Virus record (IMG/VR): IMGVR_UViG_3300034072_002211
Span: 1 to 64,000 of that record
DNA length: 64,000 nt
Direction: 5' to 3' (one strand)
Shown here one piece after another: positions 13,575 through 63,690 of this stretch (the first letter of the stretch is position 1; every line of letters starts with the position of its first letter). The notes under the pieces were generated by a model that was not told the DNA's origin, made no database searches, and saw only the letters and a list, made by a program, of their open reading frames with translations. The position numbers and the translations under genes are program-made.

Positions 13575-13583
13575 GTAGCTGAA

Positions 13584-28716: not shown

Positions 28717-28792
28717 TGGCGCTCCCGGTGGGGCTCGAACCCACGACCCGCAGATTTAGAGTCCGCTGCTCTGCCAGCTGAGCTACGGGAGC
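28717..28792 (-). tRNA. Amber suppressor tRNA, anticodon CUA
   Basis: 76 nt: GCTCCCG-TA-GCTC-AGCTGGCA-GAGC-A-GCGGA-CTCTAAA-TCTGC-GGGTC-GTGGG-TTCGAGC-CCCAC-CGGGAGC-G-CCA; 7-bp acceptor, D-loop GG, U33, anticodon CTA at 28757-28759, encoded CCA. Confidence 0.95.
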
Positions 28793-47245: not shown

Positions 47246-47797
47246 TTACTTAACTGGAGTATTTACCCCAATCATGTTGAGGATCTGGGTTGTGCGATCA
47301 ACGTAAGGATCGTTGGTTACGCGGGTATATGCGACTTTGTGGCTGTCCAGCATATTCTGGATCAAGCAGTCGACCTCAACGGCTTCTTCTGCGGTCTGAT
47401 TGCGACCAGCGGCTTGATACGCAAAGTCCCGACCAATTAGGAAGTTGTGATTGTCGTAGCTGTTGAAGACTTCCATGGTGAAGTCATCGAACGTCTCAAA
47501 GTAGTCTGGGGTCTTGTAGATCAGACCAAGCAGGAGGGGAGAGTCGGTGATCACCCATTCAACCTGCCCCTTGAGGCGCTGAACCCTGCGATTCTGCTTG
47601 GCCAAAATGTAGAGCTGATCACTCAGCACATTGGTGCGCTTTTCCCACGTCATATCCTTGGCATACTCGGTGACGAGTTCTACCTCAATTTGACGCTTCT
47701 TCATTTCAAAGAAGAGACCAGCGGCAGTTGTGGACTTGCCCGCTCCTGGACCTCCGAAAACGTTCAGAACTTTTAGTTTTCCGTGTTCTTTGACCAT
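47246..47797 (-). CDS. P-loop NTPase / nucleotide kinase-like (AAA_28/NadR-type)
   Basis: GGPGAGKSTTA, VTEYAKD, ITDSPLLL, GRNQ. Confidence 0.8.
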   Translation of the reverse strand: MVKEHGKLKVLNVFGGPGAGKSTTAAGLFFEMKKRQIEVELVTEYAKDMTWEKRTNVLSDQLYILAKQNRRVQRLKGQVEWVITDSPLLLGLIYKTPDYFETFDDFTMEVFNSYDNHNFLIGRDFAYQAAGRNQTAEEAVEVDCLIQNMLDSHKVAYTRVTNDPYVDRTTQILNMIGVNTPVK

Positions 47798-48393
47798 CGT
47801 TTCCTCAATGTTTCCGAGGCTATCTCTGAACGCCTCTGTCTTTGCTGTTCATTGAGTAGTTTTCCTGGTGACCATTCCGGTCCTGGAGATTCTACCGATC
47901 TTTTGTTGATGGAACCATCATTCCAGAAGGTTCCTAGTTTAGTCCCAATCTTAGGTCCAGTGCCAGACACGTTGCGTCCTCGATACCAACCCTCTCCAGG
48001 ACAATTCGTTGACTTTGTATCCTTATCACCATTAGTCCACCATACTTTACCACGATGGGCTAGGCCCCCTTTTCTACTGTGGACTGCTTTTTCTTCTGGT
48101 GAGAAGGCATGAAAGCCTTTCTTATCCTTAAAGGCTTGCTTACCAGCTAGAGAATCCAGACGCTTCTGTTCCTCTGATGAGATCCTTATTCTTCTAGCCA
48201 CCGCGGCAGCGGCTTGGTGATCACCCTGCTTCAAATGGATTTCGAAGTGCTCACGAATGGAGACACACTTCAGATTCTCTAACCGATTATCTGAGTGGTC
48301 TCCATTGATGTGATGAATCTCGTAAGACCGTCCTTCCTCATCTTTAGGAATAGGACCATTGGCTTCTCGCCAAATCTTACGGTAACACTTCAT
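47773..48393 (-). CDS. HNH homing endonuclease with C-terminal NUMOD-like repeats
   Basis: YRKIW...YEIHHINGDHSDNRLENL...EH...H; repeats WWTNG...PGEGWYRGR / FWNDG...PGPEWSPGK; AT-richer than flanks; start reassigned to MKCY. Confidence 0.85.
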   Translation of the reverse strand: MKCYRKIWREANGPIPKDEEGRSYEIHHINGDHSDNRLENLKCVSIREHFEIHLKQGDHQAAAAVARRIRISSEEQKRLDSLAGKQAFKDKKGFHAFSPEEKAVHSRKGGLAHRGKVWWTNGDKDTKSTNCPGEGWYRGRNVSGTGPKIGTKLGTFWNDGSINKRSVESPGPEWSPGKLLNEQQRQRRSEIASETLRKRWSKNTEN

Positions 48394-48394
48394 C

Positions 48395-49270
48395 TTACTT
48401 GCCGATGACGTTCCCAAAGACCCAAGTATGAACTCGGGCACTGACGGAATAGCCACGCTCAACTGCCTGCTCCGCGATGCGAGCCTGGTGACTCTCCTGC
48501 ATTTCACGGTCAGCACCAACTGGCATGATCCAAACGTCCCAGTCGATGCCTGCTTCACGGTAAGCCTCAGTCGCGCGAGCAACTTCGTCCCAAGCACGAT
48601 CGGTGCCGTTGCTGACGAACTTCAGCTGACCAGTCGGGCTGATTGCCTTGTAGTGAGCCAACACCTCAGGCTTGATTGCGTTTGCCCACATCTCACCAGA
48701 CAAGTAGAGCTTAGGAGAAACGGACCAGAACAGTTCACCATCATGGTTGGCAAACAGGTTCTCAAAAGCCGGACGTGGCTTCTGAGTGCCGTTGGTTTCA
48801 ATGGTCACGAACTTTGGCGTGTTGCCACGCGCTGCGAAGTTCTCCATAACATCCACGATGGCAGTCTGGCTCATCATTGGCTCACCGCCAGTGAATGCCA
48901 TGTGGTGCCACTGCTTGGACTGCGGATGAAGGAACTTACCATGAGGCAGAACAGCCTCAATCTTCTCGCAAATCTCGGCAGCGGTGCTCTGATGTGCGAG
49001 GTGCGAGAACTTCTTTGCCCAGCTGTAGCTGGAGTCACAACCACGATGGAAGACCGGCAAAGCTTCCATACTCTTGTATTCCGAAGGATCAATCTTCAGA
49101 TAGTCCAGATCGTAGGTCTCGGGCTTGTCTGGCTGCTCCTGGCCGAAACCAGCGCACTCAAAGTTACAACCCCAGACGCGCAACCATGCGGTTGGCCGAC
49201 CGGTGTACTGGCCTTCACCCTGAAAGGTCTGTCCGAAGATCTCGGAATAGCGGTATTTCTTCTCTGTCAT
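48395..49270 (-). CDS. queE: 7-carboxy-7-deazaguanine synthase (radical SAM)
   Basis: YSEIFGQTFQGEG...WLRVWGCNFECAGF...CDSSYSW, FTGGEP, IETNGT, SVSPK, SARVH. Confidence 0.9.
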   Translation of the reverse strand: MTEKKYRYSEIFGQTFQGEGQYTGRPTAWLRVWGCNFECAGFGQEQPDKPETYDLDYLKIDPSEYKSMEALPVFHRGCDSSYSWAKKFSHLAHQSTAAEICEKIEAVLPHGKFLHPQSKQWHHMAFTGGEPMMSQTAIVDVMENFAARGNTPKFVTIETNGTQKPRPAFENLFANHDGELFWSVSPKLYLSGEMWANAIKPEVLAHYKAISPTGQLKFVSNGTDRAWDEVARATEAYREAGIDWDVWIMPVGADREMQESHQARIAEQAVERGYSVSARVHTWVFGNVIGK

Positions 49271-49271
49271 T

Positions 49272-49766
49272 TTACAGTCCCTCAAACAGACCAGAACTTA
49301 CAAAGCTATAAGTTTGATCTTTCTTGGTGATCCATGTAGTCGCAACTGGAGCAGGCTTAGCGGCTTCACGTATCATCACTTCAATTGCTTTGGCCGGCGT
49401 GCAGTTAAACCATTCGCCGTGTCCCGTCTGCTTAGTGGTATCATGTCGCGAAACATACCCTTCTTTTCGAAGAGCAGAATGAACCCTGGCTTCTAGCTCT
49501 AAAGCTTCACGTTTGGCCGGCGAATCAGTCTTCGGCTGATATCCTTCACCAAGATCTTTTTCAAACCTGTGCGTGTATGAAAAGTCTAGTTTGCGAATAT
49601 TGCCCTGTTGAAGAGCCCTTCTGCGCTGATGGTATGGGTCTGCGTGGCAGCTTTCTGCCATTACACCAACCTTGCACCAGTTAGTAGCAGTCGGGAATCC
49701 TTCTTCCTCTACTTCATGTGCCACGTAAACATAAGCCACTCTTGGATCAGTTTGCGACTTAGCCAT
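49272..49766 (-). CDS. GIY-YIG-like (T5orf172/MUG113) nuclease
   Basis: AYVYV, CKVGV, LQQGN, LEARVH, GEWF. Confidence 0.7.
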   Translation of the reverse strand: MAKSQTDPRVAYVYVAHEVEEEGFPTATNWCKVGVMAESCHADPYHQRRRALQQGNIRKLDFSYTHRFEKDLGEGYQPKTDSPAKREALELEARVHSALRKEGYVSRHDTTKQTGHGEWFNCTPAKAIEVMIREAAKPAPVATTWITKKDQTYSFVSSGLFEGL

Positions 49767-50269
49767 TATGCTTTCCACCACTCCTCGTAGGGAAAGATCA
49801 CCCAACGCTCGTCTTCCGCGCGGGAGATCTCTCGACCCACATAATCTGCTTCAAAAACGTCTTGGCTGATGTTGTTCCACAACACCGCAACCTTCAGACG
49901 GGCTTCCCAACCCTGGTATGGATCGTTCCAACCCTTGGGCATCTGAGAAGTAATCTCATCCACCACTTTACGCAGGGTCTCTCCAGAATCGCAAATATCA
50001 TCAACCAGAAGGATCGAATTTCCTTCCTTGATCTTGCGCGCAGCGTCACTGATCTCTGAGACATGACTGACCATGTTGTCCCGGAGGCTGTAGTTGATAG
50101 TCTGGAGTGGCTTGCCTAGGTAATGGCTCAGCATGGTCGCCGGAACCAGTCCACCGCGCGCGATGCCAACAACCACGTCGGGCTTGAAATCGTCCTTGCC
50201 CATCTGACGGATGATCTCCTGGAGATCGCCCCGCATCTGGTCGTTGGTGTAGATGATCTTCTCAGGCAT
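49766..50269 (-). CDS. Purine phosphoribosyltransferase (Gpt-like)
   Basis: VVGIARGGLVPA, PRPP motif ILLVDDICDSGETL, WVIFPYE. Confidence 0.9.
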   Translation of the reverse strand: MPEKIIYTNDQMRGDLQEIIRQMGKDDFKPDVVVGIARGGLVPATMLSHYLGKPLQTINYSLRDNMVSHVSEISDAARKIKEGNSILLVDDICDSGETLRKVVDEITSQMPKGWNDPYQGWEARLKVAVLWNNISQDVFEADYVGREISRAEDERWVIFPYEEWWKA

Positions 50270-50945
50270 TCTTGATCTCCGAGAGGGTTGGGGCAGCGAG
50301 GGTGATGTTGCTACCCAGCGGGATTACAGTGGCATTGCCAGTTGTTGCTGGACCAACAGTCACCGTGAGGCGGTCTAGCGTCTTCTGGAAAAGGTCTGCG
50401 CGGACCATTGCGTCAAAGTGCTTGGTGGACTTGTCAGCGAACATCTGACGCGAATAACCAGTCCAGTCCGACTGAAGAGCATTGTACTTGGAGTCAATGG
50501 TCCTCAGTTCCTTGACATAATCCTCCCAAAGCTTGCGAGATGCCATGACATCATCGGCGTGGAAGATCGCGGTCTGGTTATACTTCTCAGAAGTCAGGAT
50601 GTAGATGCAACCTGCCTTGGGTGGAACACCATTATACATGGGCTTGTCACCCTTGGTGCTCTTGGCCTCTAGATCCTGGTAAGTGCCATCGCTGAAACGA
50701 ACGAGAAAGTCTGGATTGCCATTGGAACCAGCAGGCTGGCACACGAAATGACCAGCTGGAAGAGCAGCACGGACATTCTTATAGCCCGTGATCATACCCT
50801 TGTTGAACTCCTTGAAACCATACTGGATCAGAAGCTTGCGGATGGATTCCTCATGCTGTGAACCAGAATAGCTTCCCTGGGAGTAGGAAAGGTTCTGGAA
50901 TGCATCAGTGAGGAAGGCAATGAAAGTAGCAACATTTGCGTTCAC
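50262..50945 (-). CDS. Putative PD-(D/E)xK restriction endonuclease
   Basis: QPAGSNGNPDFLV...DLEAKS; GTGA-coupled to upstream MTase. Confidence 0.6.
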   Translation of the reverse strand: MNANVATFIAFLTDAFQNLSYSQGSYSGSQHEESIRKLLIQYGFKEFNKGMITGYKNVRAALPAGHFVCQPAGSNGNPDFLVRFSDGTYQDLEAKSTKGDKPMYNGVPPKAGCIYILTSEKYNQTAIFHADDVMASRKLWEDYVKELRTIDSKYNALQSDWTGYSRQMFADKSTKHFDAMVRADLFQKTLDRLTVTVGPATTGNATVIPLGSNITLAAPTLSEIKNA

Positions 50946-51799
50946 TTGTTGTATTCCTGTATTACGTCGGCTTTCCCAAATCCTGGGATGCCACTGTTTT
51001 TCTTGGAGAGCTCAACAAAGTCCAACTTGTTGAGCTTCTCGAGGGCTGCTGGAGTCTTGGCTTTGAAGAAGATCCATTGCTTCTTCCGGTCACAGTCTTC
51101 CTTTTTGTAAACCTTCACCGAATAGTCGTAGAAGCCCTGACGAGGGACAGCGAAGTCCCAGTCGTAATCAAAGAACTTCTCCGCTTCCTTGGTGCGGTTG
51201 TACTGCCACATCTCAAACTCAGGGTGGCTCGTAGGTGGTGCTTTGGACAAGCGCAGATCCTTGGACTGAGGATGCTGAGTTGACCAAACCTGAAACGAGC
51301 ACCTGAGTGCGTATGGCTTTCCGTTGAAGCTGAATGCTTCTTCAGGGAGGTCCTTGTCCATGATCAGGCTTGCGCCCTTGATGATCTTGGACTGAGCAGA
51401 CCATTTGCGGAACTGAATGGGGAGCACGAAACCAACAGTGCCGCAGAGTTCTAGGCACTTGTTGATGAACTGGATTGCGAGCACGCCTTTCTTGCCGAAA
51501 GGTGGATTGCCCACAAAGACAGCATCCTCGATATCAATGTGATCGCGAATGTCGTCAGCCAGAAAGTCCAGCTGGATGATTCCGGTATCCTCGGGAAGGA
51601 TATCAAAGCCCGTGATCGTGCGACCCACGGCTTGTGCAGCGCGGATAAAGGATCCGCCGCCTGCGCTTGGCTCAATGAGCGAAGCTGTCTCGGACACCAG
51701 CGGGAGGAAGTCTCCCAGACAGGTGGAAGCGACTTCGTCCCTTGTATAGTATTTGTCTAGGTCCTTGGCGGTCTTCGCCGCCTTGGGGGACTTGGTCAT
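50942..51799 (-). CDS. N6-adenine (amino) DNA methyltransferase
   Basis: DKYYT, motif I IEPSAGGGSF, FDI, LDFL, motif IV GNPPFG, FVLP. Confidence 0.88.
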   Translation of the reverse strand: MTKSPKAAKTAKDLDKYYTRDEVASTCLGDFLPLVSETASLIEPSAGGGSFIRAAQAVGRTITGFDILPEDTGIIQLDFLADDIRDHIDIEDAVFVGNPPFGKKGVLAIQFINKCLELCGTVGFVLPIQFRKWSAQSKIIKGASLIMDKDLPEEAFSFNGKPYALRCSFQVWSTQHPQSKDLRLSKAPPTSHPEFEMWQYNRTKEAEKFFDYDWDFAVPRQGFYDYSVKVYKKEDCDRKKQWIFFKAKTPAALEKLNKLDFVELSKKNSGIPGFGKADVIQEYNK

Positions 51800-51902
51800 T
51801 TCTCACCAGTTTGTTCTTATAGGGTGAAAGAGTCCCGCAGCCTTGAGGCTGTCTTGATTTCACCCAGTTATTGGAGCGTTTGCTCAGTACCCAGTTATAA
51901 CA

Positions 51903-52220
51903 CTAGGTTCGATGCCACCTCAATTTCATTTCGACCTCTCCCTTAGGATCGGTGAAATGAATGAGAGTGTAGCTGGTGTCCTCACATACAGTCACGCTTG
52001 GTTTCCAGCTACACTCTCGAGCCCACCTTTCAGCAGGTGGGAAGTCGTATAGAATGAACCATCCCTGGCCTAAATGTCCACAAGCAGAGTTGCTGTGGTT
52101 CCATTCAGCATGTTTGTTCCGAAACTCGTGAACGGCTTCGTGAAGCCCCTCAGGAACATCGGCCTTATCCAGGCTGATGATCATCTGAACGTAGGGATAG
52201 TCCATACTATCGGCGAGCAA
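51903..52220 (-). CDS. Hypothetical protein, FxxxxDAxxFKL family (start may be 52205)
   Basis: ERWARECSWK...IHFTDPKGEVEMKLRW; ends TAG. Confidence 0.55.
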   Translation of the reverse strand: MLADSMDYPYVQMIISLDKADVPEGLHEAVHEFRNKHAEWNHSNSACGHLGQGWFILYDFPPAERWARECSWKPSVTVCEDTSYTLIHFTDPKGEVEMKLRWHRT

Positions 52221-52221
52221 C

Positions 52222-52956
52222 TTAGGAGTGGCCCTTCATGCTCAGCATGAGCTTGTAGAACTCTTCCTTGAGGTGCGGCTCATCGCGGAACTTGCCGCGC
52301 ATGATGGCCGTTGTCATGTCGGACTCATGTTCACGCACGCCACGATGGGTCATGCAGTGGTGCTCGGCCTTCAGGACAACTGCGACGTTCTCGGTCTCCG
52401 CGTAGCGGACCAGTTCGTCAGCAATCTGAGTGGTCATCTCTTCCTGAATCTGCGGACGCTCCGCAATCCAGTGGACCAGGCGGTTGAACTTCGAGAGGCC
52501 AATGACCTTGTCCTCTGGGAAGATGCCAACCCAGCAGCGACCAACGATGTTCTGGAAGTGGTGCGCGCAGGTCGAACGGATCGAGATCGGACCAGCGGTG
52601 TAAAGATCCTGGTATCCCACGTTGGGGAACGAGGTGATCTTTGGTGCGCCAACATAGCGGCCGCCGTAGGTCTCGTTTACATACATCTTGGCGACTCGAC
52701 GAGCGGTGCCATTGGTATTGTGGTCATGCTCGGTGTCAATGACTAGACTGCGGAGAACCGCTTCCATCTTCTCAGTGACTTCGTCGACTAGAGCGGCGCG
52801 CTCTTCCTCGGTGATGAACTTCGAGATGTTGTCATTGCAGTGAAACTTCTGGCCGGCTTCAATGAGGCGCGCGCGGATCTTCTCAGAAACGGGAACCTCT
52901 TGCCCATGGGCGCAATCGTTCGAACCGCAACCCGTGGTAAGTTTGGTATCGGACAT
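52222..52956 (-). CDS. folE: GTP cyclohydrolase I
   Basis: TARRVAKMY, STCAHHF, GLSKFNRLV, PQIQEEMT, AEHHCMTHRGV. Confidence 0.96.
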   Translation of the reverse strand: MSDTKLTTGCGSNDCAHGQEVPVSEKIRARLIEAGQKFHCNDNISKFITEEERAALVDEVTEKMEAVLRSLVIDTEHDHNTNGTARRVAKMYVNETYGGRYVGAPKITSFPNVGYQDLYTAGPISIRSTCAHHFQNIVGRCWVGIFPEDKVIGLSKFNRLVHWIAERPQIQEEMTTQIADELVRYAETENVAVVLKAEHHCMTHRGVREHESDMTTAIMRGKFRDEPHLKEEFYKLMLSMKGHS

Positions 52957-53028
52957 TATCTGTCTCTCCTTATTGTTGTGCTACACTCTACTTAGAACTG
53001 GTGAGAGTGTCAATTATTGGGTGTTAAT

Positions 53029-53430
53029 TCAAATCGCACTCAATTTGAACATCACCGCGTGCTCCTTGACAAAGCGCGCATAGTCGGTATGGTCTTCAAA
53101 GAAGACGGTGATCTGGCCTCGTGCCGAATCACAATCTACCCGGAAGTCGTCACGATCCTTATAGGCTCGATGACCGTCCAGGAAGAACTGCTCATGCTTC
53201 TGAAAGGCGTAAAGACCCACATTATTGCCATCTAGGTCCCGACGGATATCTTTCATGAACTTGTCGAACATGATGCCCTTTTCCATGTCTACCATCTGCC
53301 TAGGAAAGGCGACGATAGCTTCAATGGTGACACGATTCCGCATCATTTCAACAAAGAGCTCACGGCAGTTCTGAACTGAGTCCCAGGTGATTTCCTTGCT
53401 CAGACTGACTTTGGTAATCTGAAGGTCCAT
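53029..53430 (-). CDS. Hypothetical protein, tandem triplet member 3 (FKL family)
   Basis: VFFEDHTDYARFVKEHAVMFKLS. Confidence 0.7.
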   Translation of the reverse strand: MDLQITKVSLSKEITWDSVQNCRELFVEMMRNRVTIEAIVAFPRQMVDMEKGIMFDKFMKDIRRDLDGNNVGLYAFQKHEQFFLDGHRAYKDRDDFRVDCDSARGQITVFFEDHTDYARFVKEHAVMFKLSAI

Positions 53431-53825
53431 TAGTAGGTCAACCTCACAATGGTGCCATGGTCCTTAAGGAACAACTCCAGTTCGTCTTCCTTCTCGAACA
53501 TCAGATCAAGCTCAAGCGACCGTGTCATACCATCGATATTGCGATTGCTGATCTTCCAGGTCCAATGTCCGGTGAGCTTGCTATCGCAGAACTCCTTGAC
53601 TCGTTCCCTGATCTGTCGGAATTCATCCGACTTGGATTCACGAGGAATGGTGAACCTCAACTCCACGCGATTGCGGAAGAAGGCCATGCCTAGATCCTTC
53701 ATTTCCTTACGAAGGCTGATACTCCGCTCCCATTCGGGCATGTGGTCTTCGCGCTTGATGTCAAAGACGATATCGCGGTCGATGAAACGACTGCGACGAA
53801 CATGGGTACAGACTAGATCACTCAT
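53430..53825 (-). CDS. Hypothetical protein, tandem triplet member 2
   Basis: EFCDSKLTGHW...LMFEKEDELELFLKDHGTIVRLTY. Confidence 0.7.
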   Translation of the reverse strand: MSDLVCTHVRRSRFIDRDIVFDIKREDHMPEWERSISLRKEMKDLGMAFFRNRVELRFTIPRESKSDEFRQIRERVKEFCDSKLTGHWTWKISNRNIDGMTRSLELDLMFEKEDELELFLKDHGTIVRLTY

Positions 53826-54229
53826 CAGTAGCTCAACTTCATTAGAATGGCACAGTCTTTGATGAAGCGCATGAGATCCTCCTCAAGCTCAAACATCAGG
53901 TGGACCTCAATGGACACTTCAGTGGCATTCTGATCCAGGTCTTCCTCATTGTCCCTGATGGACCAGAGGCCGGAACAATTGATATCACACCATTCTTCCA
54001 TACGGTCGAACATCTTGGTGTAGTCATCTGTGATCTCGTCAACGTCTCGGCCACCACTGGTGACTTGAGCCATATCCAACGTGATCATGAACTTGTTCCG
54101 AGTGAAGGCCTGGAAGAGGGAGGACCACTGGGCCCTCACCTCTGCCTTTGGATCTCTTCCAAGGAACAAATCCTCGTAGCGGACAAACCTGCTACGGCGC
54201 ATTGTTCCAATTGAGATCTTAGCCTGCAT
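53825..54229 (-). CDS. Hypothetical protein, tandem triplet member 1
   Basis: EEWCDINCSGLW...LMFELEEDLMRFIKDCAILMKLSY; start approximate. Confidence 0.65.
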   Translation of the reverse strand: MQAKISIGTMRRSRFVRYEDLFLGRDPKAEVRAQWSSLFQAFTRNKFMITLDMAQVTSGGRDVDEITDDYTKMFDRMEEWCDINCSGLWSIRDNEEDLDQNATEVSIEVHLMFELEEDLMRFIKDCAILMKLSY

Positions 54230-55361
54230 AGCGATACTGCTCACCATGTCCCATCAGAATGTCGATGGTGCGGTCAATGCTCTTGTGCTGGTCGTCAGCC
54301 GCATAGCTGACTTCTGAGTCATCGAGCGTGGTCAGCAGGTAGTTCATCTTGTTCACTGCGTCTTCAATCGACCATGGCACAAAGAGGTGCTTGGCCGAGT
54401 TGTTGAGCGCCTGTGGGAAGCTGCGGAAAGCAGGACAAAGCGACAGCGTGCCAAGTGCCGAAGCCTCGTTCAGGGTGTTGCTCTGCCAGTCCTGGCGAGC
54501 GCAGTTGAACTGAAGCTGCGAGTCTGCGAGGATCTCATAATACTCGCTCTTCTTCAGACCAGTCTTGATGACCAGCTTGCCCTCGGCAGCGAGACGCTCA
54601 GCGCGTTCCACATACTCAGGGTGAGTCGAGCGCAGCTTCTGCGAACCAGTGAGGATCCAGAACTCGTAGCCACGTTCCACGAAGTCACTCTGCTCAATGA
54701 GATCCATGAGGAACCATGGCTGCTTCTCATAGTCAAAGCGCGAGCTGTAGATAATGCGCTTCTTGCGCGCATGAAGCGGCTTGAGAGCCTGCCAACCACC
54801 AACTCGGCTGCGGACTTCCTCACGGTCGAACGGCAAGCCAGTGACGTAGAGTGGGGCTTCCAGGCACGCAATACGCATGTGGGGACCCATCTCAGTGTTG
54901 GCCATCAGAATGCCGTCACAGGTCTTGCTGACCAGCTGCTCAAAGTCACGCATCCAGTTGCGCCATGGGAACACAAAGTCATCGGGATCGATGCTCTGTG
55001 CCAGGTTGCGCGTGAAGACCTTGGGCTTCTTTTCAGCGGGCAGCTGGTTCATGATGTAGGGCAGCGATTCATAGCCGGGCTGGAACAGATCTTCGCTGAA
55101 GATCACGTCGTTGCCACCGACTTCACCGCTTTCCATGAGGCGGACCAGCTCTGCCATCTGGGTCATCGACCAATAGCAACGACCATGGGCATCGAGGACC
55201 TGTCCGGTCTTGATGTCCTTGTCTTCGCGCAGGGTGCGACCATGAACGGTCAGGAATGGAATGCCGCGCTCCTTGAACCTGCTCTCATTCCAGTCCTTGA
55301 GCTGTAGCGTGTAACGCTCCTCATAGGGTTCCAGAGGCAGGTAGACAATACGCTTGGTCAT
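54219..55361 (-). CDS. GT-B fold glycosyltransferase
   Basis: IIYSSRFDYEKQP, YYEILADS...NTLNEASALG...PAFRSFP (family-1-like nucleotide-sugar motif). Confidence 0.75.
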   Translation of the reverse strand: MTKRIVYLPLEPYEERYTLQLKDWNESRFKERGIPFLTVHGRTLREDKDIKTGQVLDAHGRCYWSMTQMAELVRLMESGEVGGNDVIFSEDLFQPGYESLPYIMNQLPAEKKPKVFTRNLAQSIDPDDFVFPWRNWMRDFEQLVSKTCDGILMANTEMGPHMRIACLEAPLYVTGLPFDREEVRSRVGGWQALKPLHARKKRIIYSSRFDYEKQPWFLMDLIEQSDFVERGYEFWILTGSQKLRSTHPEYVERAERLAAEGKLVIKTGLKKSEYYEILADSQLQFNCARQDWQSNTLNEASALGTLSLCPAFRSFPQALNNSAKHLFVPWSIEDAVNKMNYLLTTLDDSEVSYAADDQHKSIDRTIDILMGHGEQYRYAG

Positions 55362-55373
55362 TTGGTTCTCCTT

Positions 55374-55745
55374 TTACGCCTTGACGGCGTATTCTGCGAA
55401 CGAACCATTCTCACCATCTTCGCTAACTTCGATAGTGATGTGACGCCCAGGATACTTCGCAGTAATCTGAGCGTAGAGGTCGTCGCTGATCATTTCGCAG
55501 CTCTTGTAATCAAGCTGCAGGGTACCCTCGCTGTAGAGGCCTTCGAGCCAACGCTTGAACTGGATGAACTCCAGGTCGCGGTCGTCGTGGAAGACCTCAA
55601 TCCACACCTTGAACTTGAACATATGGCGGTGCGGATAACCCAGAAACTGAACGTCCTCTAGGTTAGGATCCGTAAGGGCTGCGGGATATTTGTGGATACC
55701 TTCCTTCTGAAAGGTCACCCAGATCATCTTGAAGTTTTCGGTCAT
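55374..55745 (-). CDS. queD: QueD/6-pyruvoyl-tetrahydropterin synthase-like T-fold protein
   Basis: EGIHKYP...HRHMF (Zn ligands), DRDLEFI, SCEMI, IEVSEDGENG; clustered with folE/queE. Confidence 0.7.
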   Translation of the reverse strand: MTENFKMIWVTFQKEGIHKYPAALTDPNLEDVQFLGYPHRHMFKFKVWIEVFHDDRDLEFIQFKRWLEGLYSEGTLQLDYKSCEMISDDLYAQITAKYPGRHITIEVSEDGENGSFAEYAVKA

Positions 55746-55781
55746 ATCCTGTTGTAACAGAACTGGTGACCGCTGGTCAAT

Positions 55782-56006
55782 TTACATCCACGTCAACTTG
55801 AACAACATCGCCTTCTGAGGGTCCTGGAACCAGATGGCTTCTACCGCGGCACCATTTCCAACTAGGCTATGGCGAGCCTTATTTTGAGACAACCAGGAGA
55901 CTATCTCAGGCTTCAAGGCAATGCGCTTGTGCTTGAACTCGTAGGGATCGCCTTTAAAGGAGGCCCATTCCCAGTGGTCCTTATACCTGATAGGAACTAT
56001 GGGCAT
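55782..56006 (-). CDS. Hypothetical protein, FxxxxDAxxFKL family
   Basis: Start MPIVP with GGAGG; LKPEIVSWL...WFQDPQKAMLFKLTWM. Confidence 0.7.
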   Translation of the reverse strand: MPIVPIRYKDHWEWASFKGDPYEFKHKRIALKPEIVSWLSQNKARHSLVGNGAAVEAIWFQDPQKAMLFKLTWM

Positions 56007-56418
56007 ATGATCCCTCCGCACCAAGTCGCCTGCGAATCTCAGCATCACTGATTGCGGCAACATTCCACACTGAGGCAAAATATCGCGCATCTTTGGTGCT
56101 TGTAAAGAAGAGGATCACGTCAGTGCCTTGCTGAACACCTGGACGCTTTTTGATCCTGAGCGCGTATTTCTTATAGACCATATTGCGCTGCTTGAGCCAA
56201 CGAGTGATCTCAGGGTTAACTCGCATTGTCCAGTTGCCATTGCCTGGATATTCGGGATTGTTGGATTCCCAACGCCAATGCTCACGACGCTTTAGGACAA
56301 CACCTACATCCAGGAAAGCTTGAACAGGATTGCCTGCTTTCTGTCGTGAACGTGAAGCATAGCGTTGAGTCCGCCTGTTGGCGTTAACGTGTAGGCCACC
56401 CTGTTCAACACCAACCAC
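55981..56418 (-). CDS. Hypothetical protein, FKL family (true start uncertain, likely downstream of tracked start)
   Basis: VNPEITRWLKQ...LFFTSTKDARYF. Confidence 0.5.
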   Translation of the reverse strand: MVGVEQGGLHVNANRRTQRYASRSRQKAGNPVQAFLDVGVVLKRREHWRWESNNPEYPGNGNWTMRVNPEITRWLKQRNMVYKKYALRIKKRPGVQQGTDVILFFTSTKDARYFASVWNVAAISDAEIRRRLGAEGSYAHSSYQV

Positions 56419-56528
56419 CGAAGGACTTCCTCTTTAAGAACCAACTGGCTACGACGATATGTCACATACTCAGATTCAAGATGCCGCTTGTCTAGTGCGA
56501 ACATCTGATCCAGAGCGGTTATATCCAT
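56304..56528 (-). CDS. Hypothetical protein, FKL family
   Basis: LKEEVLRWL...VHDRKQAILFKLSWM; ends TAG. Confidence 0.7.
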   Translation of the reverse strand: MDITALDQMFALDKRHLESEYVTYRRSQLVLKEEVLRWLVLNRVAYTLTPTGGLNAMLHVHDRKQAILFKLSWM

Positions 56529-56803
56529 GTGAGCTTGAATAGAGCCGCGTGGTTGTCTTGTTCAAATATGATTTTGCTCTGCCCACCGCCCTTGAGATTG
56601 AGGCGGTAGGGAAAGCCCATAGTGTCAAGCCATTCTTGGATCTCAGGCTTGAGGCGCCGCTTGGGCATTTGCCTGGTGTTGGGCTGACGTGGTTCGTTCT
56701 CGGGGATAGTCCAGTGAACGTTGAAATAAAGCCTGAACGACCGACGCCTGCGCTCTTTGTAGATCGCAGGGTCAGTCCATTTCTCAGGCAGTCTTTCGGG
56801 CAT
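56519..56803 (-). CDS. Hypothetical protein, FKL family
   Basis: LKPEIQEWL...IFEQDNHAALFKLTWI. Confidence 0.7.
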   Translation of the reverse strand: MPERLPEKWTDPAIYKERRRRSFRLYFNVHWTIPENEPRQPNTRQMPKRRLKPEIQEWLDTMGFPYRLNLKGGGQSKIIFEQDNHAALFKLTWI

Positions 56804-57359
56804 ACTTGTTCCAGATCATCATGTCGAAGTCTGCTACAGTCATCTTGGCCTGGTCCGCAAGCTTGATGAATTGCTCCTCAAGCTTCTTGTAGGTTGGACC
56901 AGCGGGTGGAGTGCCCTTCTGCGTAGTCAGACCCAAATCGCGCATGTGACGGATCATGTGGGTGTCGAGGGCAGCAACGCGAGCGCCCTTGCGGGTGTGG
57001 AGAACATAGAAACGCGAGGTCTTGGCACCAACGCCGGGGATGGTTTCCAGCTGGTCAGTGGTGACCGTCTTCATGTCGAACTGAAGCGAGTCCTTGAACA
57101 CGCGCTCCAAGCGTGTGAACTGACCCAAGCGGCTGTCCTTGATGCGCTGAAGGAGAACATTCGTGTCCACCATCCACTGGATCTTCTCAAAGGGCGTTGC
57201 GTCCTTGAGTTCATCGGGAATGTCAGTGGTCAAGAAACGCTCAAGCGCCTTGGCCTGAACCGTAGCAGTCTTACCGGCAACCACAACGCTGAACAACCAG
57301 TATTCCTGAAGTTCAGCGAGCGAGCGGTCGTAGTTCGTCACATCACTGGGATCAATCAC
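56784..57359 (-). CDS. Helix-hairpin-helix DNA glycosylase-like protein (HhH-GPD)
   Basis: LETIPGVGAKTSRF (HhH with Lys), AALDTHMIR, YKKLE...DFDMMIW. Confidence 0.8.
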   Translation of the reverse strand: MIDPSDVTNYDRSLAELQEYWLFSVVVAGKTATVQAKALERFLTTDIPDELKDATPFEKIQWMVDTNVLLQRIKDSRLGQFTRLERVFKDSLQFDMKTVTTDQLETIPGVGAKTSRFYVLHTRKGARVAALDTHMIRHMRDLGLTTQKGTPPAGPTYKKLEEQFIKLADQAKMTVADFDMMIWNKYARKTA

Positions 57360-57944: not shown

Positions 57945-59435
57945 TCACCAACGCTGACTGATCAGCATTCCAGGGAAGAATCGCCCCCAGATACTCTCCG
58001 TGATGAAGGGCATGATGGGATGGAACAGCTTGAGGAGGATTCGCAATCCGTCCATGAGCGCGGACAATGCCTCGGCATCATCAGCGTAGAGCCGTTCCTT
58101 GATGTCCTCGAGGTATGAGCCGCAGAAGTCATCGAAGAGAATCCTCCGGCACTCAATAGCTGCCTTGCTGAACTCGAGATCCTTATAGAGGGCTCGAATA
58201 TGCTCCTGTCGCTCCCTGAGATGCTCTAGCAGGGCCTCATCGCGCTCATGTGTGCTCGACATAGCCGTGATACCGATACGTCTCAGATGGTGCTCAGCGA
58301 AGCGAGCAGCATTCCACAACTTGGTCGCTGTGGCTTTACCAGCTTGGAACTTCTCGTCCCACATCTTCATGTCTTGTGCTGGCTGAGTTGCCTCCGCAAG
58401 AGCATACCGCATTGCGTCGCAACCATAGCGGTCGATAATGGTTAGCGGATCAATACCGTTGCCCAGACTTTTGCTCATCTTGCGACCCTGCTTGTCACGC
58501 ATGATCCCGTGGAGGTAGATTGTCTGGAATGGCATCTTGTCTGTGAGGAGCAGACCCATCATCAGCATACGGGCGCACCAGAAGAACAGAATGTCGTCCG
58601 CGGTTTCAATCATGTCCGCAGGATAGAACTTCCGCATGTCTGGAGTATCGTTGGGCCAGCCAAGAGTGGCAAAGGGCCACAGGGCTGAGCTGAACCAAGT
58701 GTCCAAGCATCCTTCCTCACGCTGGTAACCTTCGGGACCCTCTAGACCAATGAAGATCTTCTCGCCCTTGGTCCAGATGGGAAGTTTGTGACCCCAACGG
58801 ATCTGACGGCTGATATTCCAGGGCTCGATGTTGTCCAAGAAGTGGATCAATGTCTTGTTCTCATGCTCAGGAATGATCTTGAGCTCACCCCGTATCATAC
58901 GATTTCTCAATTCCTTTGCAGGAATACGCATGTCGATAAACCACTGATTATCAGTGGTATAAAGGAGGCCTTGTGCGTGGATGCGGGCCAAAGCTTCAAT
59001 CACAGCATCGGAATATGATTTGTCGAGAGTAAAGGTATAGCGCGACCAATCACAGGATGCGCCAGTGCGGCGGATCTGCTGGTTGATCTCACCAGACAAG
59101 TTGGCCTTGTAGGTCTCCGCGAACGCGTCGAAGGCGGGACCCTTGGGATCCAAACCTTGAGCCAACATGGCTTCGTCCAGCTTTTGCTGAGTTGCTAGAC
59201 CCGCGTGATCAGTGCCAGGAAGCCATAGAGCTGCCTTGCCCTCAAAGCGAGCGTTGCGGATAGAGATGTCTTGAAGGGTTGTGAAAAGCGCGTGCCCCAT
59301 ATGGAGTTTGCCCGTGATATTGGGCGGGGGCATCGGGATAAAGTAGGGCTCTTGGCCCTCGGGCTTGAATGCGCCGCTTGCTTCCCACTTGTGATAGATG
59401 GACGCTTCTTCAGTGTGATCGAAGCGTTTGGTCAG
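57945..59435 (-). CDS. valS: Minimal valyl-tRNA synthetase lacking the CP1 editing domain and C-terminal coiled coil; non-canonical start
   Basis: PPPNITGKLHMGH, DHAGLATQ, WNISRQIRWGH, LDTWFSSALWP, DILFFW, KMSKS; ValRS-like N-terminus (KRFDHTEEASIYHKWEASGAF) extends 34 codons above tracked ATG to CTG 59435. Confidence 0.88.
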   Translation of the reverse strand: MTKRFDHTEEASIYHKWEASGAFKPEGQEPYFIPMPPPNITGKLHMGHALFTTLQDISIRNARFEGKAALWLPGTDHAGLATQQKLDEAMLAQGLDPKGPAFDAFAETYKANLSGEINQQIRRTGASCDWSRYTFTLDKSYSDAVIEALARIHAQGLLYTTDNQWFIDMRIPAKELRNRMIRGELKIIPEHENKTLIHFLDNIEPWNISRQIRWGHKLPIWTKGEKIFIGLEGPEGYQREEGCLDTWFSSALWPFATLGWPNDTPDMRKFYPADMIETADDILFFWCARMLMMGLLLTDKMPFQTIYLHGIMRDKQGRKMSKSLGNGIDPLTIIDRYGCDAMRYALAEATQPAQDMKMWDEKFQAGKATATKLWNAARFAEHHLRRIGITAMSSTHERDEALLEHLRERQEHIRALYKDLEFSKAAIECRRILFDDFCGSYLEDIKERLYADDAEALSALMDGLRILLKLFHPIMPFITESIWGRFFPGMLISQRW

Positions 59436-60362: not shown

Positions 60363-60668
60363 TTAGATGACGCGAACTTCGCACTGGCCGCCGTGGCGGG
60401 TGGTGCCGTTTGCGTAAACAGCGACTTCATAGCCGTCCGCTTCAACGGTCTTAGCGAAGGTGTGGAACGCGGCCACATCATCTTCGTCAATGATCCAGTT
60501 GGCAGACTTGCGGTTGAAGCCTTCTGCGATGATGTAACCGGCCCAGCGGAGGTTAGGGAATTGGGCGAACAGGAGTTCTCCCGTCCGACGCTCGCTGGTG
60601 ACCAGCTCTTCACGGCTTGGGGCCTTGGTCTTGTTGATCAGGATTACTCTGTTCATTTCATTCCTCAA
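60363..60668 (-). CDS. Hypothetical protein
   Basis: 101 aa, ATGA-coupled to polymerase. Confidence 0.65.
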   Translation of the reverse strand: MRNEMNRVILINKTKAPSREELVTSERRTGELLFAQFPNLRWAGYIIAEGFNRKSANWIIDEDDVAAFHTFAKTVEADGYEVAVYANGTTRHGGQCEVRVI

Positions 60669-63655: not shown

Positions 63656-63690
63656 CAGATTCTCCTTATCTTATGTTCTTGGGTGCGTAT

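What the first reader, a model, noticed from the sequence alone, without database searches (positions are those of the whole stretch)
48395..57359. 7-deazaguanine pathway (folE, queD-like, queE) interleaved with a PRTase, glycosyltransferase and HhH glycosylase, but no queC/dpdA in view
FolE+QueD+QueE make 7-carboxy-7-deazaguanine (CDG) (established). Phages usually add QueC/QueF/Gat-QueC and a DpdA transglycosylase to insert the base in DNA; none is in this window. Instead queE sits near a purine phosphoribosyltransferase (49766) and a P-loop kinase (47246), queD is directly upstream of a GT-B glycosyltransferase (54219), and a DNA glycosylase lies nearby. Inference: a variant DNA (or tRNA) modification route, e.g. 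PRTase/kinase converting CDG into a nucleotide for polymerase incorporation, and/or glycosylation of the deazapurine.
Basis: partly seen in the sequence, partly recalled or inferred. Interest (0 to 1): 0.62.

Follow-up and report, generated by a model that had tools for sequence, protein, structure and literature searches.

The report
Jumbo-phage 7-deazaguanine DNA modification cluster
This stretch is the core of a known kind of phage system that replaces guanine in the phage's DNA with a 7-deazaguanine base; the "missing" insertion enzyme lies elsewhere on the same 468-kb phage genome, and a glycosyltransferase and a purine phosphoribosyltransferase prove to be regular, so far unexplained, partners of the system.

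Summary
The genes are real, all on the minus strand: QueE, a Gpt-like PRTase, FolE, a GT-B/GT4 glycosyltransferase, a QueD-like T-fold protein and an HhH glycosylase.

The "queD-like" gene is DpdL. It carries the LxxxHRHxF signature of the proposed 7-carboxy-7-deazaguanine (CDG) decarboxylase of Cellulophaga phage phiST, whose DNA has 7-deazaguanine (dDG) in place of all G (Cui 2023).

"No dpdA" is an artefact. The window comes from a 277-kb IMG/VR record that is the first part of a 468,011-bp contig. That contig also encodes a TGT-fold DpdA at about 381 kb and a true QueD at about 335 kb. Sinorhizobium phage Phosso scatters its genes the same way.

QueC absence is genuine: five complete relatives lack it.

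In 80 uncultured phage loci, counting only those with enough flank, DpdL is accompanied by:
- the GT in 66/68
- DpdA in 61/66
- FolE in 45/50
- the PRTase in 35/46
- the HhH glycosylase or the P-loop kinase in only 2/80

Best reading: FolE, QueD and QueE make CDG, DpdL acts on it, and DpdA exchanges the product into DNA. The GT is a core partner with an unknown acceptor. The PRTase is an accessory, most likely recycling released guanine. Routing through a deazaguanine nucleotide remains a weaker rival.

The parts
48395..49285 (-). QueE, 7-carboxy-7-deazaguanine synthase (radical SAM). The likely ATG start is at 49270.
   Evidence: phrog_2076 E 3.9e-55. NCBIfam QueE models are the best hits but score below their cut-offs. 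C-x3-C-x38-C spacing is shared with the ZZ01 and PA5oct QueE.
49766..50269 (-). Gpt-like type I purine phosphoribosyltransferase, a frequent accessory gene of the system.
   Evidence: PF00156 79 bits. PDB 1vdm 2.5e-11, XGPRT 1e-4. The DDxxD[ST]G motif is kept in all five phage homologues. Present beside DpdL in 35/46 loci with enough flank. Sits directly between FolE and QueE in relative L016.
52222..52956 (-). FolE, GTP cyclohydrolase I, the first step of the pathway.
   Evidence: PF01227 E 1.4e-45. NCBIfam FolE 1.5e-49.
54219..55361 (-). GT-B (GT4-like, retaining type) glycosyltransferase. Core partner of DpdL; acceptor unknown.
   Evidence: More than 6000 homologues, some carrying PF00534/PF13692. 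AF2 pLDDT 90.4. Foldseek matches BshA, MshA, PimA and BGluT at E 1e-13 to 1e-10. Beside DpdL in 66/68 loci.
55374..55745 (-). DpdL, a QueD paralogue proposed to be the CDG decarboxylase.
   Evidence: LxxxHRHxF motif read in the sequence. phiST DpdL 1.2e-13. phrog_17812 3.6e-38. An alignment with 10 DpdL and 4 QueD proteins separates the two groups.
56784..57359 (-). HhH (EndoIII/Ogg-like) DNA glycosylase with the HhH lysine and the downstream aspartate. Probably a repair or other function; not a conserved part of the system.
   Evidence: Ogg-HhH 1e-3. NCBIfam N-glycosylase/DNA lyase 5e-8. phrog_11575 1.6e-60. Found in only 2/80 DpdL loci. The family is mostly in Caulobacter phiCbK-like phages.
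47246..47797 (-). P-loop (AAA_28) nucleoside/nucleotide kinase-like protein. Not a conserved part of the system.
   Evidence: PF13521 4e-13. phrog_2107. Found in 2/80 DpdL loci.
47773..48597 (-). HNH homing-endonuclease-like gene inserted next to queE.
   Evidence: PF13392 6e-13, phrog_12324. Absent at this place in the close relative L016.
49272..49805 (-). T5orf172 (GIY-YIG-related) gene inserted between the PRTase and QueE.
   Evidence: PF10544 2.6e-5. Absent in L016, where the PRTase and QueE overlap by 4 nt.
50262..51799 (-). Inserted pair: an NPPF-motif DNA methyltransferase-like gene (50942-51799) and a PD-(D/E)xK-like gene (50262-50945). It splits FolE from the PRTase.
   Evidence: phrog_5172, phrog_799 and phrog_18119. 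Motifs read in the translations. Absent in L016.

Best explanation
The region is the central block of a DpdL-type 7-deazaguanine DNA-modification system in a jumbo phage of about 468 kb. The phage is related to Sinorhizobium phage Phosso and, more distantly, to Pseudomonas phage PA5oct.

Pathway:
1. FolE converts GTP to dihydroneopterin triphosphate.
2. QueD makes CPH4. It is encoded about 190 kb away round the genome, at about 335 kb of the contig.
3. QueE makes CDG.
4. There is no QueC, so the pathway stops at CDG. DpdL, a QueD paralogue, is proposed to decarboxylate CDG to 7-deazaguanine.
5. A TGT-fold DpdA at about 381 kb of the contig exchanges the base for guanine in phage DNA after replication, which protects the DNA from restriction.

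The GT4-type glycosyltransferase next to DpdL is as tightly linked to DpdL as DpdA is. It therefore belongs to the system, but its acceptor is unknown.

The Gpt-like PRTase is a common but dispensable accessory. I infer that it converts the guanine released by DpdA back to GMP. That would pull the exchange forward and refill the GTP that FolE consumes.

Shown: gene identities, folds, synteny and co-occurrence. Inferred: every enzymatic step of DpdL, DpdA, the GT and the PRTase.
For: - Family assignments.
- The window record is bases 1-277,444 of JGI contig Ga0310127_000018, 468,011 bp.
- The same contig encodes P0157, 559 aa, with a DSGGFQ motif. Its AF2 model (pLDDT 85.5) hits only tRNA-guanine transglycosylases in the PDB, top 50, probability 1.00.
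- A PF01242 QueD with an HC..LHGY motif is on the same contig.
- The complete Phosso genome scatters its genes the same way: cluster at 150 kb, DpdA at 323 kb, QueD at 372 kb.
- DpdA homologues lie beside GT and DpdL in PA5oct, BCSR5, BUDD, ACP17, ZZ01 and L110.
- Co-occurrence in 80 IMG/VR loci with enough flank: GT 66/68, DpdA 61/66, FolE 45/50, PRTase 35/46, QueE 31/44.
- QueC is absent from five complete relatives.
- phiST, which has FolE, QueD, QueE, DpdL and DpdA3 but no QueC, carries dDG in place of all dG (PMC10516641).
- PA5oct DNA resists G-containing restriction sites (PMC12191111).
- The PRTase keeps the DDxxD[ST]G motif of 6-oxopurine PRTases. It is less conserved than DpdA or the GT, as expected of an accessory.
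Against: - No chemistry is known for this phage or for any GT-bearing relative.
- The DpdL decarboxylase activity is only proposed. Co-expression of dpdL and dpdA from phiST and from ACP17 in E. coli gave no dDG.
- P0157 has no Pfam or NCBIfam TGT hit, and a profile of its family finds nothing in PDB sequences. Only the fold and the motifs link it to TGT.
- 7-deazaguanine has no obvious hydroxyl for a glycosyltransferase, so if the GT acts on the base the end product cannot be plain dDG.
- Complete replacement of G, as in phiST, is hard to reach by post-replicative exchange.
- QueC could not be looked for in about 132 kb of the contig.
Confidence: 0.7

Rival explanations
1. Nucleotide-level route. 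The PRTase joins CDG or 7-deazaguanine to PRPP. Kinases and the phage ribonucleotide reductase then make the deoxynucleoside triphosphate, a MazG-type enzyme removes dGTP, and the polymerase incorporates the analogue. DpdA would be secondary or would serve another purpose.
For: - The PRTase is almost confined to DpdL phages (17/18 records). It sits between FolE and QueE in L016 and abuts or lies next to QueE in ZZ01 and PA5oct.
- phiST replaces 100% of G and has a MazG-like gene and P-loop genes in or near its cluster.
- The ADG nucleoside was seen in Campylobacter cells infected by CP220, as cited.
- Heterologous dpdA plus dpdL gave no dDG.
- The phage has a class Ia RNR and a MazG.
- IMPDH/GMP-reductase-like and HIT genes occur in some clusters.
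- From my own knowledge, not checked here: TubE and ToyH of Streptomyces attach CDG or preQ0 to PRPP.
Against: - DpdA is present in this phage and in 61/66 loci, more often than the PRTase at 35/46.
- Phosso gave no PRTase hit in the tblastn search. ACP17 and BUDD gave none either, and none is annotated in the cluster regions inspected.
- The PRTase keeps the aspartate that 6-oxopurine PRTases use at N7, an atom that deazapurines lack (the role of the residue is from established HGPRT/XGPRT enzymology).
- The P-loop kinase is not conserved (2/80).
Confidence: 0.17
2. Pterin-glycoside branch. FolE, the T-fold protein and the GT make a glycosylated pterin, as cyanobacteria make biopterin glucoside with PTPS and BGluT. 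This would be independent of DNA modification.
For: - The GT model resembles small-molecule GT4 enzymes, including UDP-glucose:tetrahydrobiopterin glucosyltransferase 5zes (rank 39).
- DpdL is a PTPS-fold protein.
- FolE follows the GT in the canonical gene order.
Against: - DpdL lacks the catalytic cysteine of PTPS and QueD.
- DpdL in phiST goes with dDG in DNA and no GT.
- DpdL-GT travels with DpdA (61/66) and QueE and sits in the replication module next to the DNA polymerase.
- BGluT is only one of hundreds of similarly scoring GT4 matches.
Confidence: 0.05
3. tRNA rather than DNA is the target. The phage boosts queuosine-type modification of host or phage tRNA.
For: - TGT-fold enzymes act on tRNA in cells.
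- The phage carries translation-related genes: a ValRS fragment and a tRNA.
Against: - There is no QueC or QueF, so preQ0 and preQ1 cannot be made.
- The only tRNA in the window has a CUA anticodon, not GUN.
- Relatives with the same genes have modified DNA (phiST) or restriction-resistant DNA (PA5oct).
- The genes sit in the DNA replication module.
Confidence: 0.03

Closest known systems
DpdL/DpdA3 system of Cellulophaga phage phiST, dDG replacing all dG (Cui et al. 2023, NAR, PMC10516641)
   Same: - FolE, QueD, QueE and DpdL with no QueC.
- The same LxxxHRHxF DpdL signature.
- A homologous Gpt-like PRTase (34% identity).
- A transglycosylase-superfamily protein for insertion.
   Different: - phiST has the short DpdA3 (259 aa, no DSGGFQ), not the roughly 520-560-aa DSGGFQ type found here.
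- phiST has no GT.
- Its PRTase is about 17 kb from the cluster.
- It has a MazG-like gene inside the cluster.
- The phages themselves are unrelated: a 79-kb Bacteroidota phage against a 468-kb jumbo phage.
Clusters of Pseudomonas phage PA5oct (gp162-gp168), Acidovorax phage ACP17 (gp119-gp126), Synechococcus phage BUCT-ZZ01, Xanthomonas phage BUDD and Burkholderia phage BCSR5
   Same: - DpdA (TGT-like, DSGGFQ), GT, DpdL, FolE and QueE in one block beside the DNA polymerase.
- The PRTase is present in PA5oct and ZZ01.
- QueD lies far away in PA5oct and BUDD.
- PA5oct DNA behaves as G-modified.
   Different: - Here, and in Phosso, L016, L114 and L115, DpdA has moved out of the block and an HhH glycosylase lies upstream instead.
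- The cluster here is interrupted by homing-endonuclease and methyltransferase/nuclease insertions.
- The U181 protein (ACP17 gp122-like), usually found upstream of DpdL, is absent.
Classical phage preQ0/G+ systems: 9g, CAjan, iggy (DpdA1/2 with FolE, QueD, QueE, QueC)
   Same: - The same first three biosynthetic steps.
- Insertion by a TGT-superfamily DNA transglycosylase.
- An anti-restriction role.
   Different: - No QueC, Gat-QueC or QueF here, so the pathway branches at CDG.
- DpdL, the GT and the PRTase are added.
Deazapurine nucleoside antibiotic pathways: toyocamycin ToyH, tubercidin TubE (from my own knowledge, not checked with tools)
   Same: - GCH I, CPH4 synthase and CDG synthase combined with a PRPP-dependent phosphoribosyltransferase.
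   Different: - Those pathways make free nucleosides and have no transglycosylase.
- No homology test against ToyH or TubE could be run here.

Membership tests
DpdL (proposed CDG decarboxylase, QueD paralogue) | LxxxHRHxF in place of the CxxxHGH motif of QueD | tested here: met
   The sequence reads L-GYP-HRH-M-F at 55374-55745. An alignment with 10 DpdL and 4 QueD proteins separates the two groups.
DpdL (proposed CDG decarboxylase, QueD paralogue) | Sequence homology to phiST CGPG_00067 | tested here: met
   phmmer 1.2e-13. tblastn 35% identity over 88% of the query.
DpdL (proposed CDG decarboxylase, QueD paralogue) | Genome encodes FolE, QueD, QueE and a DpdA but no QueC | tested here: met
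   FolE and QueE are in the window. QueD and DpdA are on the same contig. No QueC was found in the 277-kb record or in the 58 kb walked. About 132 kb of the contig was not seen. Five complete relatives lack QueC.
DpdL (proposed CDG decarboxylase, QueD paralogue) | Decarboxylates CDG to 7-deazaguanine | not testable with these tools
   The activity is unproven even for phiST DpdL.
DpdA / TGT superfamily DNA transglycosylase (protein P0157, outside the window) | TGT TIM-barrel fold | tested here: met
   AF2 pLDDT 85.5. The Foldseek top 50 are all tRNA-guanine transglycosylases, E about 1e-6, TM by target about 0.5.
DpdA / TGT superfamily DNA transglycosylase (protein P0157, outside the window) | Catalytic-site motif DSGG[FL]Q | tested here: met
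   GDSGGFQ is present in P0157 and invariant in 28 homologues. It is shared with PA5oct gp168 and BCSR5.
DpdA / TGT superfamily DNA transglycosylase (protein P0157, outside the window) | Match to the Pfam TGT model PF01702 or to a curated DpdA model | tested here: not met
   No precomputed Pfam domain. No NCBIfam hit. PF01702 also misses the known phiST DpdA3, so this test is insensitive.
DpdA / TGT superfamily DNA transglycosylase (protein P0157, outside the window) | Exchanges guanine in DNA for a 7-deazaguanine base | not testable with these tools
   Needs biochemistry or genetics.
QueE (CDG synthase) | Radical-SAM protein matching QueE models, with three cluster cysteines | tested here: met
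   phrog_2076 3.9e-55. The best NCBIfam hits are all QueE models, though below their cut-offs. The cysteines are conserved with ZZ01 and PA5oct.
FolE (GTP cyclohydrolase I) | PF01227 above the gathering score | tested here: met
   155 bits against 27.
6-oxopurine (xanthine-guanine) phosphoribosyltransferase | Type I PRTase domain with a DDxxD[ST]G PRPP motif | tested here: met
   PF00156 79 bits. The motif is conserved in five phage homologues.
6-oxopurine (xanthine-guanine) phosphoribosyltransferase | Scores as an equivalog of Gpt or Hpt | tested here: not met
   The best hit, NF006613 xanthine PRTase, scores 42.9 bits against a cut-off of 138. The substrate is therefore open.
GT-B / GT4 glycosyltransferase | Two-Rossmann-domain GT-B fold similar to GT4 enzymes | tested here: met
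   pLDDT 90.4. Foldseek: BshA 1.4e-13 with TM 0.68-0.71, then MshA, PimA and glycogen synthase.
GT-B / GT4 glycosyltransferase | Pfam Glycos_transf_1 match on the protein itself | tested here: not met
   No family at E <= 0.01. Homologues at about 50% identity do carry PF00534 or PF13692.
HhH-GPD DNA glycosylase | HhH motif followed by a catalytic aspartate; a lysine in the HhH for lyase activity | tested here: inconclusive
   GVGAKT ... ALDTH was read in the translation. Pfam and NCBIfam hits are below their cut-offs. No structure was predicted.

The most novel reading that the evidence does not exclude
In this very common phage gene block (DpdA, DpdL, GT, FolE, PRTase, QueE), the glycosyltransferase would add a sugar to a 7-deazaguanine-derived base. 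That would give a glycosylated deazapurine in DNA, a modification not yet described. The PRTase would close a guanine to GMP to GTP to deazaguanine recycling loop, making wholesale replacement of G affordable. Sugar-nucleotide genes embedded in some clusters fit this reading: an epimerase/dehydratase in 22 of 80 loci, and a cupin, a nucleotidyltransferase and a UDP-glucose-dehydrogenase-like gene in L110.
Probability: 0.3. Interest if true: 0.8.

Novelty: new variant of a known kind. Interest (0 to 1): 0.55.

Why it matters
7-Deazaguanine DNA modifications let phages escape restriction enzymes and Cas9. They are in turn recognised by newly found defences such as END nucleases and antiviral glycosylases.

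The DpdL branch is the least understood. DpdL activity has never been reconstituted, and the only chemically defined product (dDG) comes from phiST-like phages, which lack the glycosyltransferase.

This analysis shows that in the much larger group of DpdL phages a GT4 glycosyltransferase is as constant a partner as DpdA, and a Gpt-like PRTase is present in about three quarters. DpdL itself has at least 598 IMG/VR hits and 2110 representative clusters. The main text of the key paper mentions neither gene. They may be the 'other unknown enzymes' whose absence made heterologous reconstitution fail.

The work also names cultured phages in which the chemistry can be tested directly: PA5oct, ACP17, Phosso, BUDD and BUCT-ZZ01. 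Finally, it shows that an IMG/VR 'provirus' trim can hide pathway genes.

Tried and rejected
- Megablast of 48-58 kb against the phage collection: no match.
- Pfam TGT, QueC and PTPS models on the 277-kb record: nothing, apart from a weak QueC hit that proved to be NadE. The TGT model also misses the known phiST DpdA3, so its silence carries no weight.
- phiST DpdA3 by phmmer and tblastn: it finds only Bacteroidota and Bacillus phages, and nothing here.
- Profiles of ACP17-type DpdA and of QueD on the record: nothing. This is explained by truncation of the record.
- Searching the relative's ENA scaffold as a genome: not held.
- QueD look-up through metagenome loci and through the word search: the source contig was not among the rows shown. 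QueD was finally found by walking the contig with five successful look-ups; one further look-up failed.
- Profile of the P0157 family against PDB sequences: no hit. The fold search was needed.
- Idea that the HhH glycosylase replaces DpdA in this clade: rejected. DpdA exists elsewhere on the contig, and the HhH family is mainly in Caulobacter phages that did not appear in the deazaguanine gene searches.
- Idea that the P-loop kinase belongs to the pathway: rejected (2/80 loci).
- Search for DpdL-GT fusion proteins: none. Only one fusion was found, to the unknown U181 family.
- The one PRTase-bearing phage record without DpdL (MT835497) showed no pathway genes within 7 kb.
- No complex prediction was run.
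- Supplementary tables of Cui 2023 are not held, so I could not check which DpdA subfamily they assign to ACP17.

Full report
**What is in the sequence**

All genes between 44 and 64 kb lie on the minus strand. Reading in the direction of transcription:
- a B-family DNA polymerase (60665-63670)
- a clamp-like or structural protein
- a truncated ValRS-like gene (57945-59333)
- an HhH glycosylase (56784-57359)
- small paralogous ORFs
- a 123-aa T-fold protein (55374-55745)
- a 380-aa glycosyltransferase (54219-55361)
- three more small paralogues
- FolE (52222-52956)
- a methyltransferase-like and PD-(D/E)xK-like pair (50262-51799)
- a PRTase (49766-50269)
- a T5orf172 gene
- QueE (48395-49285)
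- an HNH gene
- an AAA_28 kinase (47246-47797)
- a 5'-3' exonuclease

Family assignments come from Pfam, PHROGs, NCBIfam and the PDB. The 'queD-like' gene has no PTPS hit. It carries L-GYP-HRH-M-F where QueD has CxxxHG[H/Y]. That is exactly the LxxxHRHxF signature by which Cui et al. 2023 (PMC10516641) define DpdL, the proposed CDG decarboxylase of Cellulophaga phage phiST. phiST DpdL matches it at 1.2e-13.

**The missing genes are missing only from the record**

The window is the start of a 277,444-bp IMG/VR record classed as a 'provirus' and estimated 60% complete. TGT, QueC, PTPS and custom DpdA and QueD profiles find nothing in it.

The giant ORF at 2475-13574 is encoded at 2477-13576 of JGI contig 3300034072|Ga0310127_000018, which is 468,011 bp long. 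That is the size of the complete Sinorhizobium phage Phosso genome, 469,473 bp.

Phosso has the same block: glycosylase, DpdL, GT, FolE, QueE. It keeps QueD and a 549-aa DSGGFQ protein about 220 and 170 kb away from that block. A word search with the Phosso protein returned P0157, 55% identical, on a 468,011-bp contig. A look-up placed P0157 on Ga0310127_000018 at about 380.4-382.1 kb, next to a 256-aa ORF that lies where Phosso has its primase, and DnaB. Walking the contig along Phosso synteny found a PF01242 QueD at about 335 kb, and a class Ia ribonucleotide reductase at about 357-360 kb.

P0157 has no Pfam or NCBIfam hit, and its family profile finds nothing in PDB sequences. Its AlphaFold model (pLDDT 85.5) nevertheless matches only tRNA-guanine transglycosylases among the top 50 PDB hits. 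GDSGGFQ is invariant in its family. The phage therefore has a DpdA and a QueD.

QueC is a different matter. The one weak hit is NadE. None appeared in the 58 kb walked. The complete genomes of Phosso, PA5oct, ACP17, BUCT-ZZ01 and BUDD have none above the cut-off. This agrees with the published rule for DpdL phages.

**How conserved is the neighbourhood?**

Close relatives show the compact form:
- ENA scaffold L016 (GT 93% identical): HhH, DpdL, GT, two paralogues, FolE, PRTase, QueE, kinase, exonuclease. PRTase and QueE overlap by 4 nt, and there is no methyltransferase, nuclease, HNH or T5orf172 gene. Those four genes are therefore insertions in our phage.
- A JGI contig (GT 84% identical) has a similar block.
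- A distant 301-kb contig (L110): DNA polymerase, DpdA, an unknown 172-aa gene, DpdL, GT, epimerase/dehydratase, cupin, nucleotidyltransferase, glutaredoxin, FolE, PRTase, then a UDP-glucose-dehydrogenase-like gene and an acetyltransferase.

Among cultured phages, a DSGGFQ-type DpdA lies beside GT and DpdL in PA5oct (gp168, gp167, gp166), ACP17 (gp123-125), BUCT-ZZ01, BUDD (annotated there as queuine tRNA-ribosyltransferase) and BCSR5.

I then fetched 80 IMG/VR loci around DpdL homologues; there were at least 598 hits. I scored them with profiles of each family. Counting only loci with enough flank:

| Gene | Loci with the gene |
|---|---|
| GT | 66/68 |
| DpdA | 61/66 |
| FolE | 45/50 |
| PRTase | 35/46 |
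| QueE | 31/44 |
| QueD | 4/30 |
| HhH | 2/80 |
| kinase | 2/80 |

The two loci with HhH and the kinase are the nearest relatives, and they also lack a local DpdA.

In the isolate-phage collection, homologues of the PRTase occur in 18 of 50,697 records, 17 of which carry DpdL. Homologues of the GT occur in 14 records, all with DpdL. The HhH family is mostly in Caulobacter phiCbK-like phages, and Phosso's best match to it lies elsewhere in that genome.

**Interpretation**

The locus is a member of the DpdL branch of phage 7-deazaguanine DNA modification. FolE, QueD and QueE make CDG. With no QueC the pathway stops there. DpdL acts on CDG, by proposed decarboxylation to 7-deazaguanine. A TGT-fold DpdA exchanges the base into DNA.

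Experimental anchors exist only in relatives:
- phiST DNA has dDG in place of all dG.

**The two extra enzymes**

*The GT.* Its model (pLDDT 90.4) is a GT-B enzyme closest to retaining GT4 enzymes that mostly glycosylate small molecules: BshA, MshA, PimA, LmbT and, at rank 39, the tetrahydrobiopterin glucosyltransferase. Arg208, Lys213 and Glu299 are invariant and Asp291 nearly so, giving a D-x7-E spacing. This fits an active enzyme, though that step is my reading and not a test. The GT is as constant as DpdA and usually directly follows DpdL, so it is a core component. Its acceptor is unknown. 7-Deazaguanine offers no hydroxyl, so either the end product in GT-bearing phages is not plain dDG, or the GT acts on something else. 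Sugar-nucleotide genes inside some clusters point to a sugar-bearing product.

*The PRTase.* It is a divergent 6-oxopurine-type enzyme. The best NCBIfam hit is xanthine PRTase, far below its cut-off, and the nearest structures are archaeal purine PRTases and XGPRT. All five phage homologues keep DDxxD[ST]G, whose last aspartate contacts N7 in HGPRT and XGPRT (established enzymology). It is less conserved than DpdA or the GT.

I therefore favour an accessory salvage role: guanine released by DpdA goes to GMP, then to GTP, and back into FolE. This is inference. The alternative, making a CDG or DG nucleotide for polymerase incorporation, is kept as a rival. Points in its favour:
- phiST replaces all its G.
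- Heterologous dpdA plus dpdL failed.
- The phage has an RNR and a MazG.
- Some clusters hold IMPDH/GMP-reductase-like and HIT genes.

**Novelty**

The system type is known (Cui 2023). ACP17 and PA5oct have been mentioned as carrying deazaguanine genes. In the papers I could search:
- The main text of Cui 2023 contains no mention of a glycosyltransferase, PRPP, salvage or a kinase.
- Full-text searches combining deazaguanine with glycosyltransferase or with phosphoribosyltransferase gave nothing on this point.

The constant GT partner and the frequent PRTase partner therefore appear undescribed, and the chemistry of GT-bearing phages is unknown. I rate the finding a new variant of a known kind. 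It is of moderate interest as it stands, and of higher interest if a glycosylated deazapurine is found.

**Limits**

- No chemistry is available for this phage.
- About 132 kb of the contig was not inspected.
- Cui's supplementary tables were not available.
- ToyH and TubE could not be compared.
- Co-occurrence counts come from the 80 loci most similar to our DpdL. They are not phylogenetically independent.

Noticed in passing
window 1-64000 (whole record): The IMG/VR record, classed as a 'provirus' and 60% complete, is the first 277 kb of a 468,011-bp JGI contig (Ga0310127_000018). That matches the size of the complete phage Phosso genome. The provirus trimming looks like an artefact that cut a jumbo phage genome in two.
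   Followed up: yes
window 28717-28792 (-): This is the only tRNA in the window, and it has a CUA anticodon (an amber-suppressor type; ARAGORN calls it tRNA-Pyl). I did not examine whether any phage genes use in-frame TAG.
   Followed up: no
window 2475-13574 (+): A giant 3699-aa ORF with no Pfam family on record. It follows an 824-aa ORF that runs off the contig start.
   Followed up: no
window 57945-59333 (-): A 462-aa protein matching only positions about 351-685 of valine-tRNA ligase: the second half of the catalytic domain plus the anticodon-binding domain. The close relative L016 has the same truncated form (452 aa), so it is not a recent break.
   Followed up: partly
window 47773-48597, 49272-49805, 50262-51799 (-): An HNH endonuclease, a T5orf172 gene and a pair made of an NPPF methyltransferase-like gene and a PD-(D/E)xK-like gene interrupt the FolE-PRTase-QueE run. 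That run is contiguous in the close relative L016. They look like mobile insertions, and the pair looks like a small restriction-modification cassette.
   Followed up: partly
window 53029-54247, 55782-56090, 56519-56803, possibly 51903-52220 (-): Families of small paralogous proteins of about 95-140 aa whose C-termini end in ...[FMR]KL[TS][WYA].. They are scattered through the cluster and partly conserved in L016. They have no family hit and their function is unknown.
   Followed up: partly
IMG/VR loci L114-L193; ACP17 gp122; L110 6439-6957: An unknown protein family of about 181 aa ('U181') lies immediately upstream of DpdL in 70 of 80 loci, and one representative is fused to DpdL (P0469). 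It has no Pfam hit and is absent from this phage's 277-kb record.
   Followed up: partly
window 48395-49285 (-): QueE has an unusual spacing of its iron-sulfur cysteines, C-x3-C-x38-C. The insertion of about 36 residues before the third cysteine is shared with the PA5oct and BUCT-ZZ01 QueE.
   Followed up: partly
G000 118576-118782 (-); G000 about 214.5-215.6 kb (-): Outside the window the record encodes a MazG-family pyrophosphatase, and a NAD synthase (NadE) next to a 2OG-Fe(II) oxygenase.
   Followed up: no
contig Ga0310127_000018, about 334-392 kb (loci L023, L104-L106, L108): The unseen half of the phage genome carries PAS-domain sensor kinase and response-regulator genes, SPFH/flotillin, TelA, a NADAR domain protein, a CCA-adding-enzyme-like nucleotidyltransferase and an Smr protein. 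Phosso has SPFH, TelA, a PAS protein, a nucleotidyltransferase and Smr in the same order.
   Followed up: no
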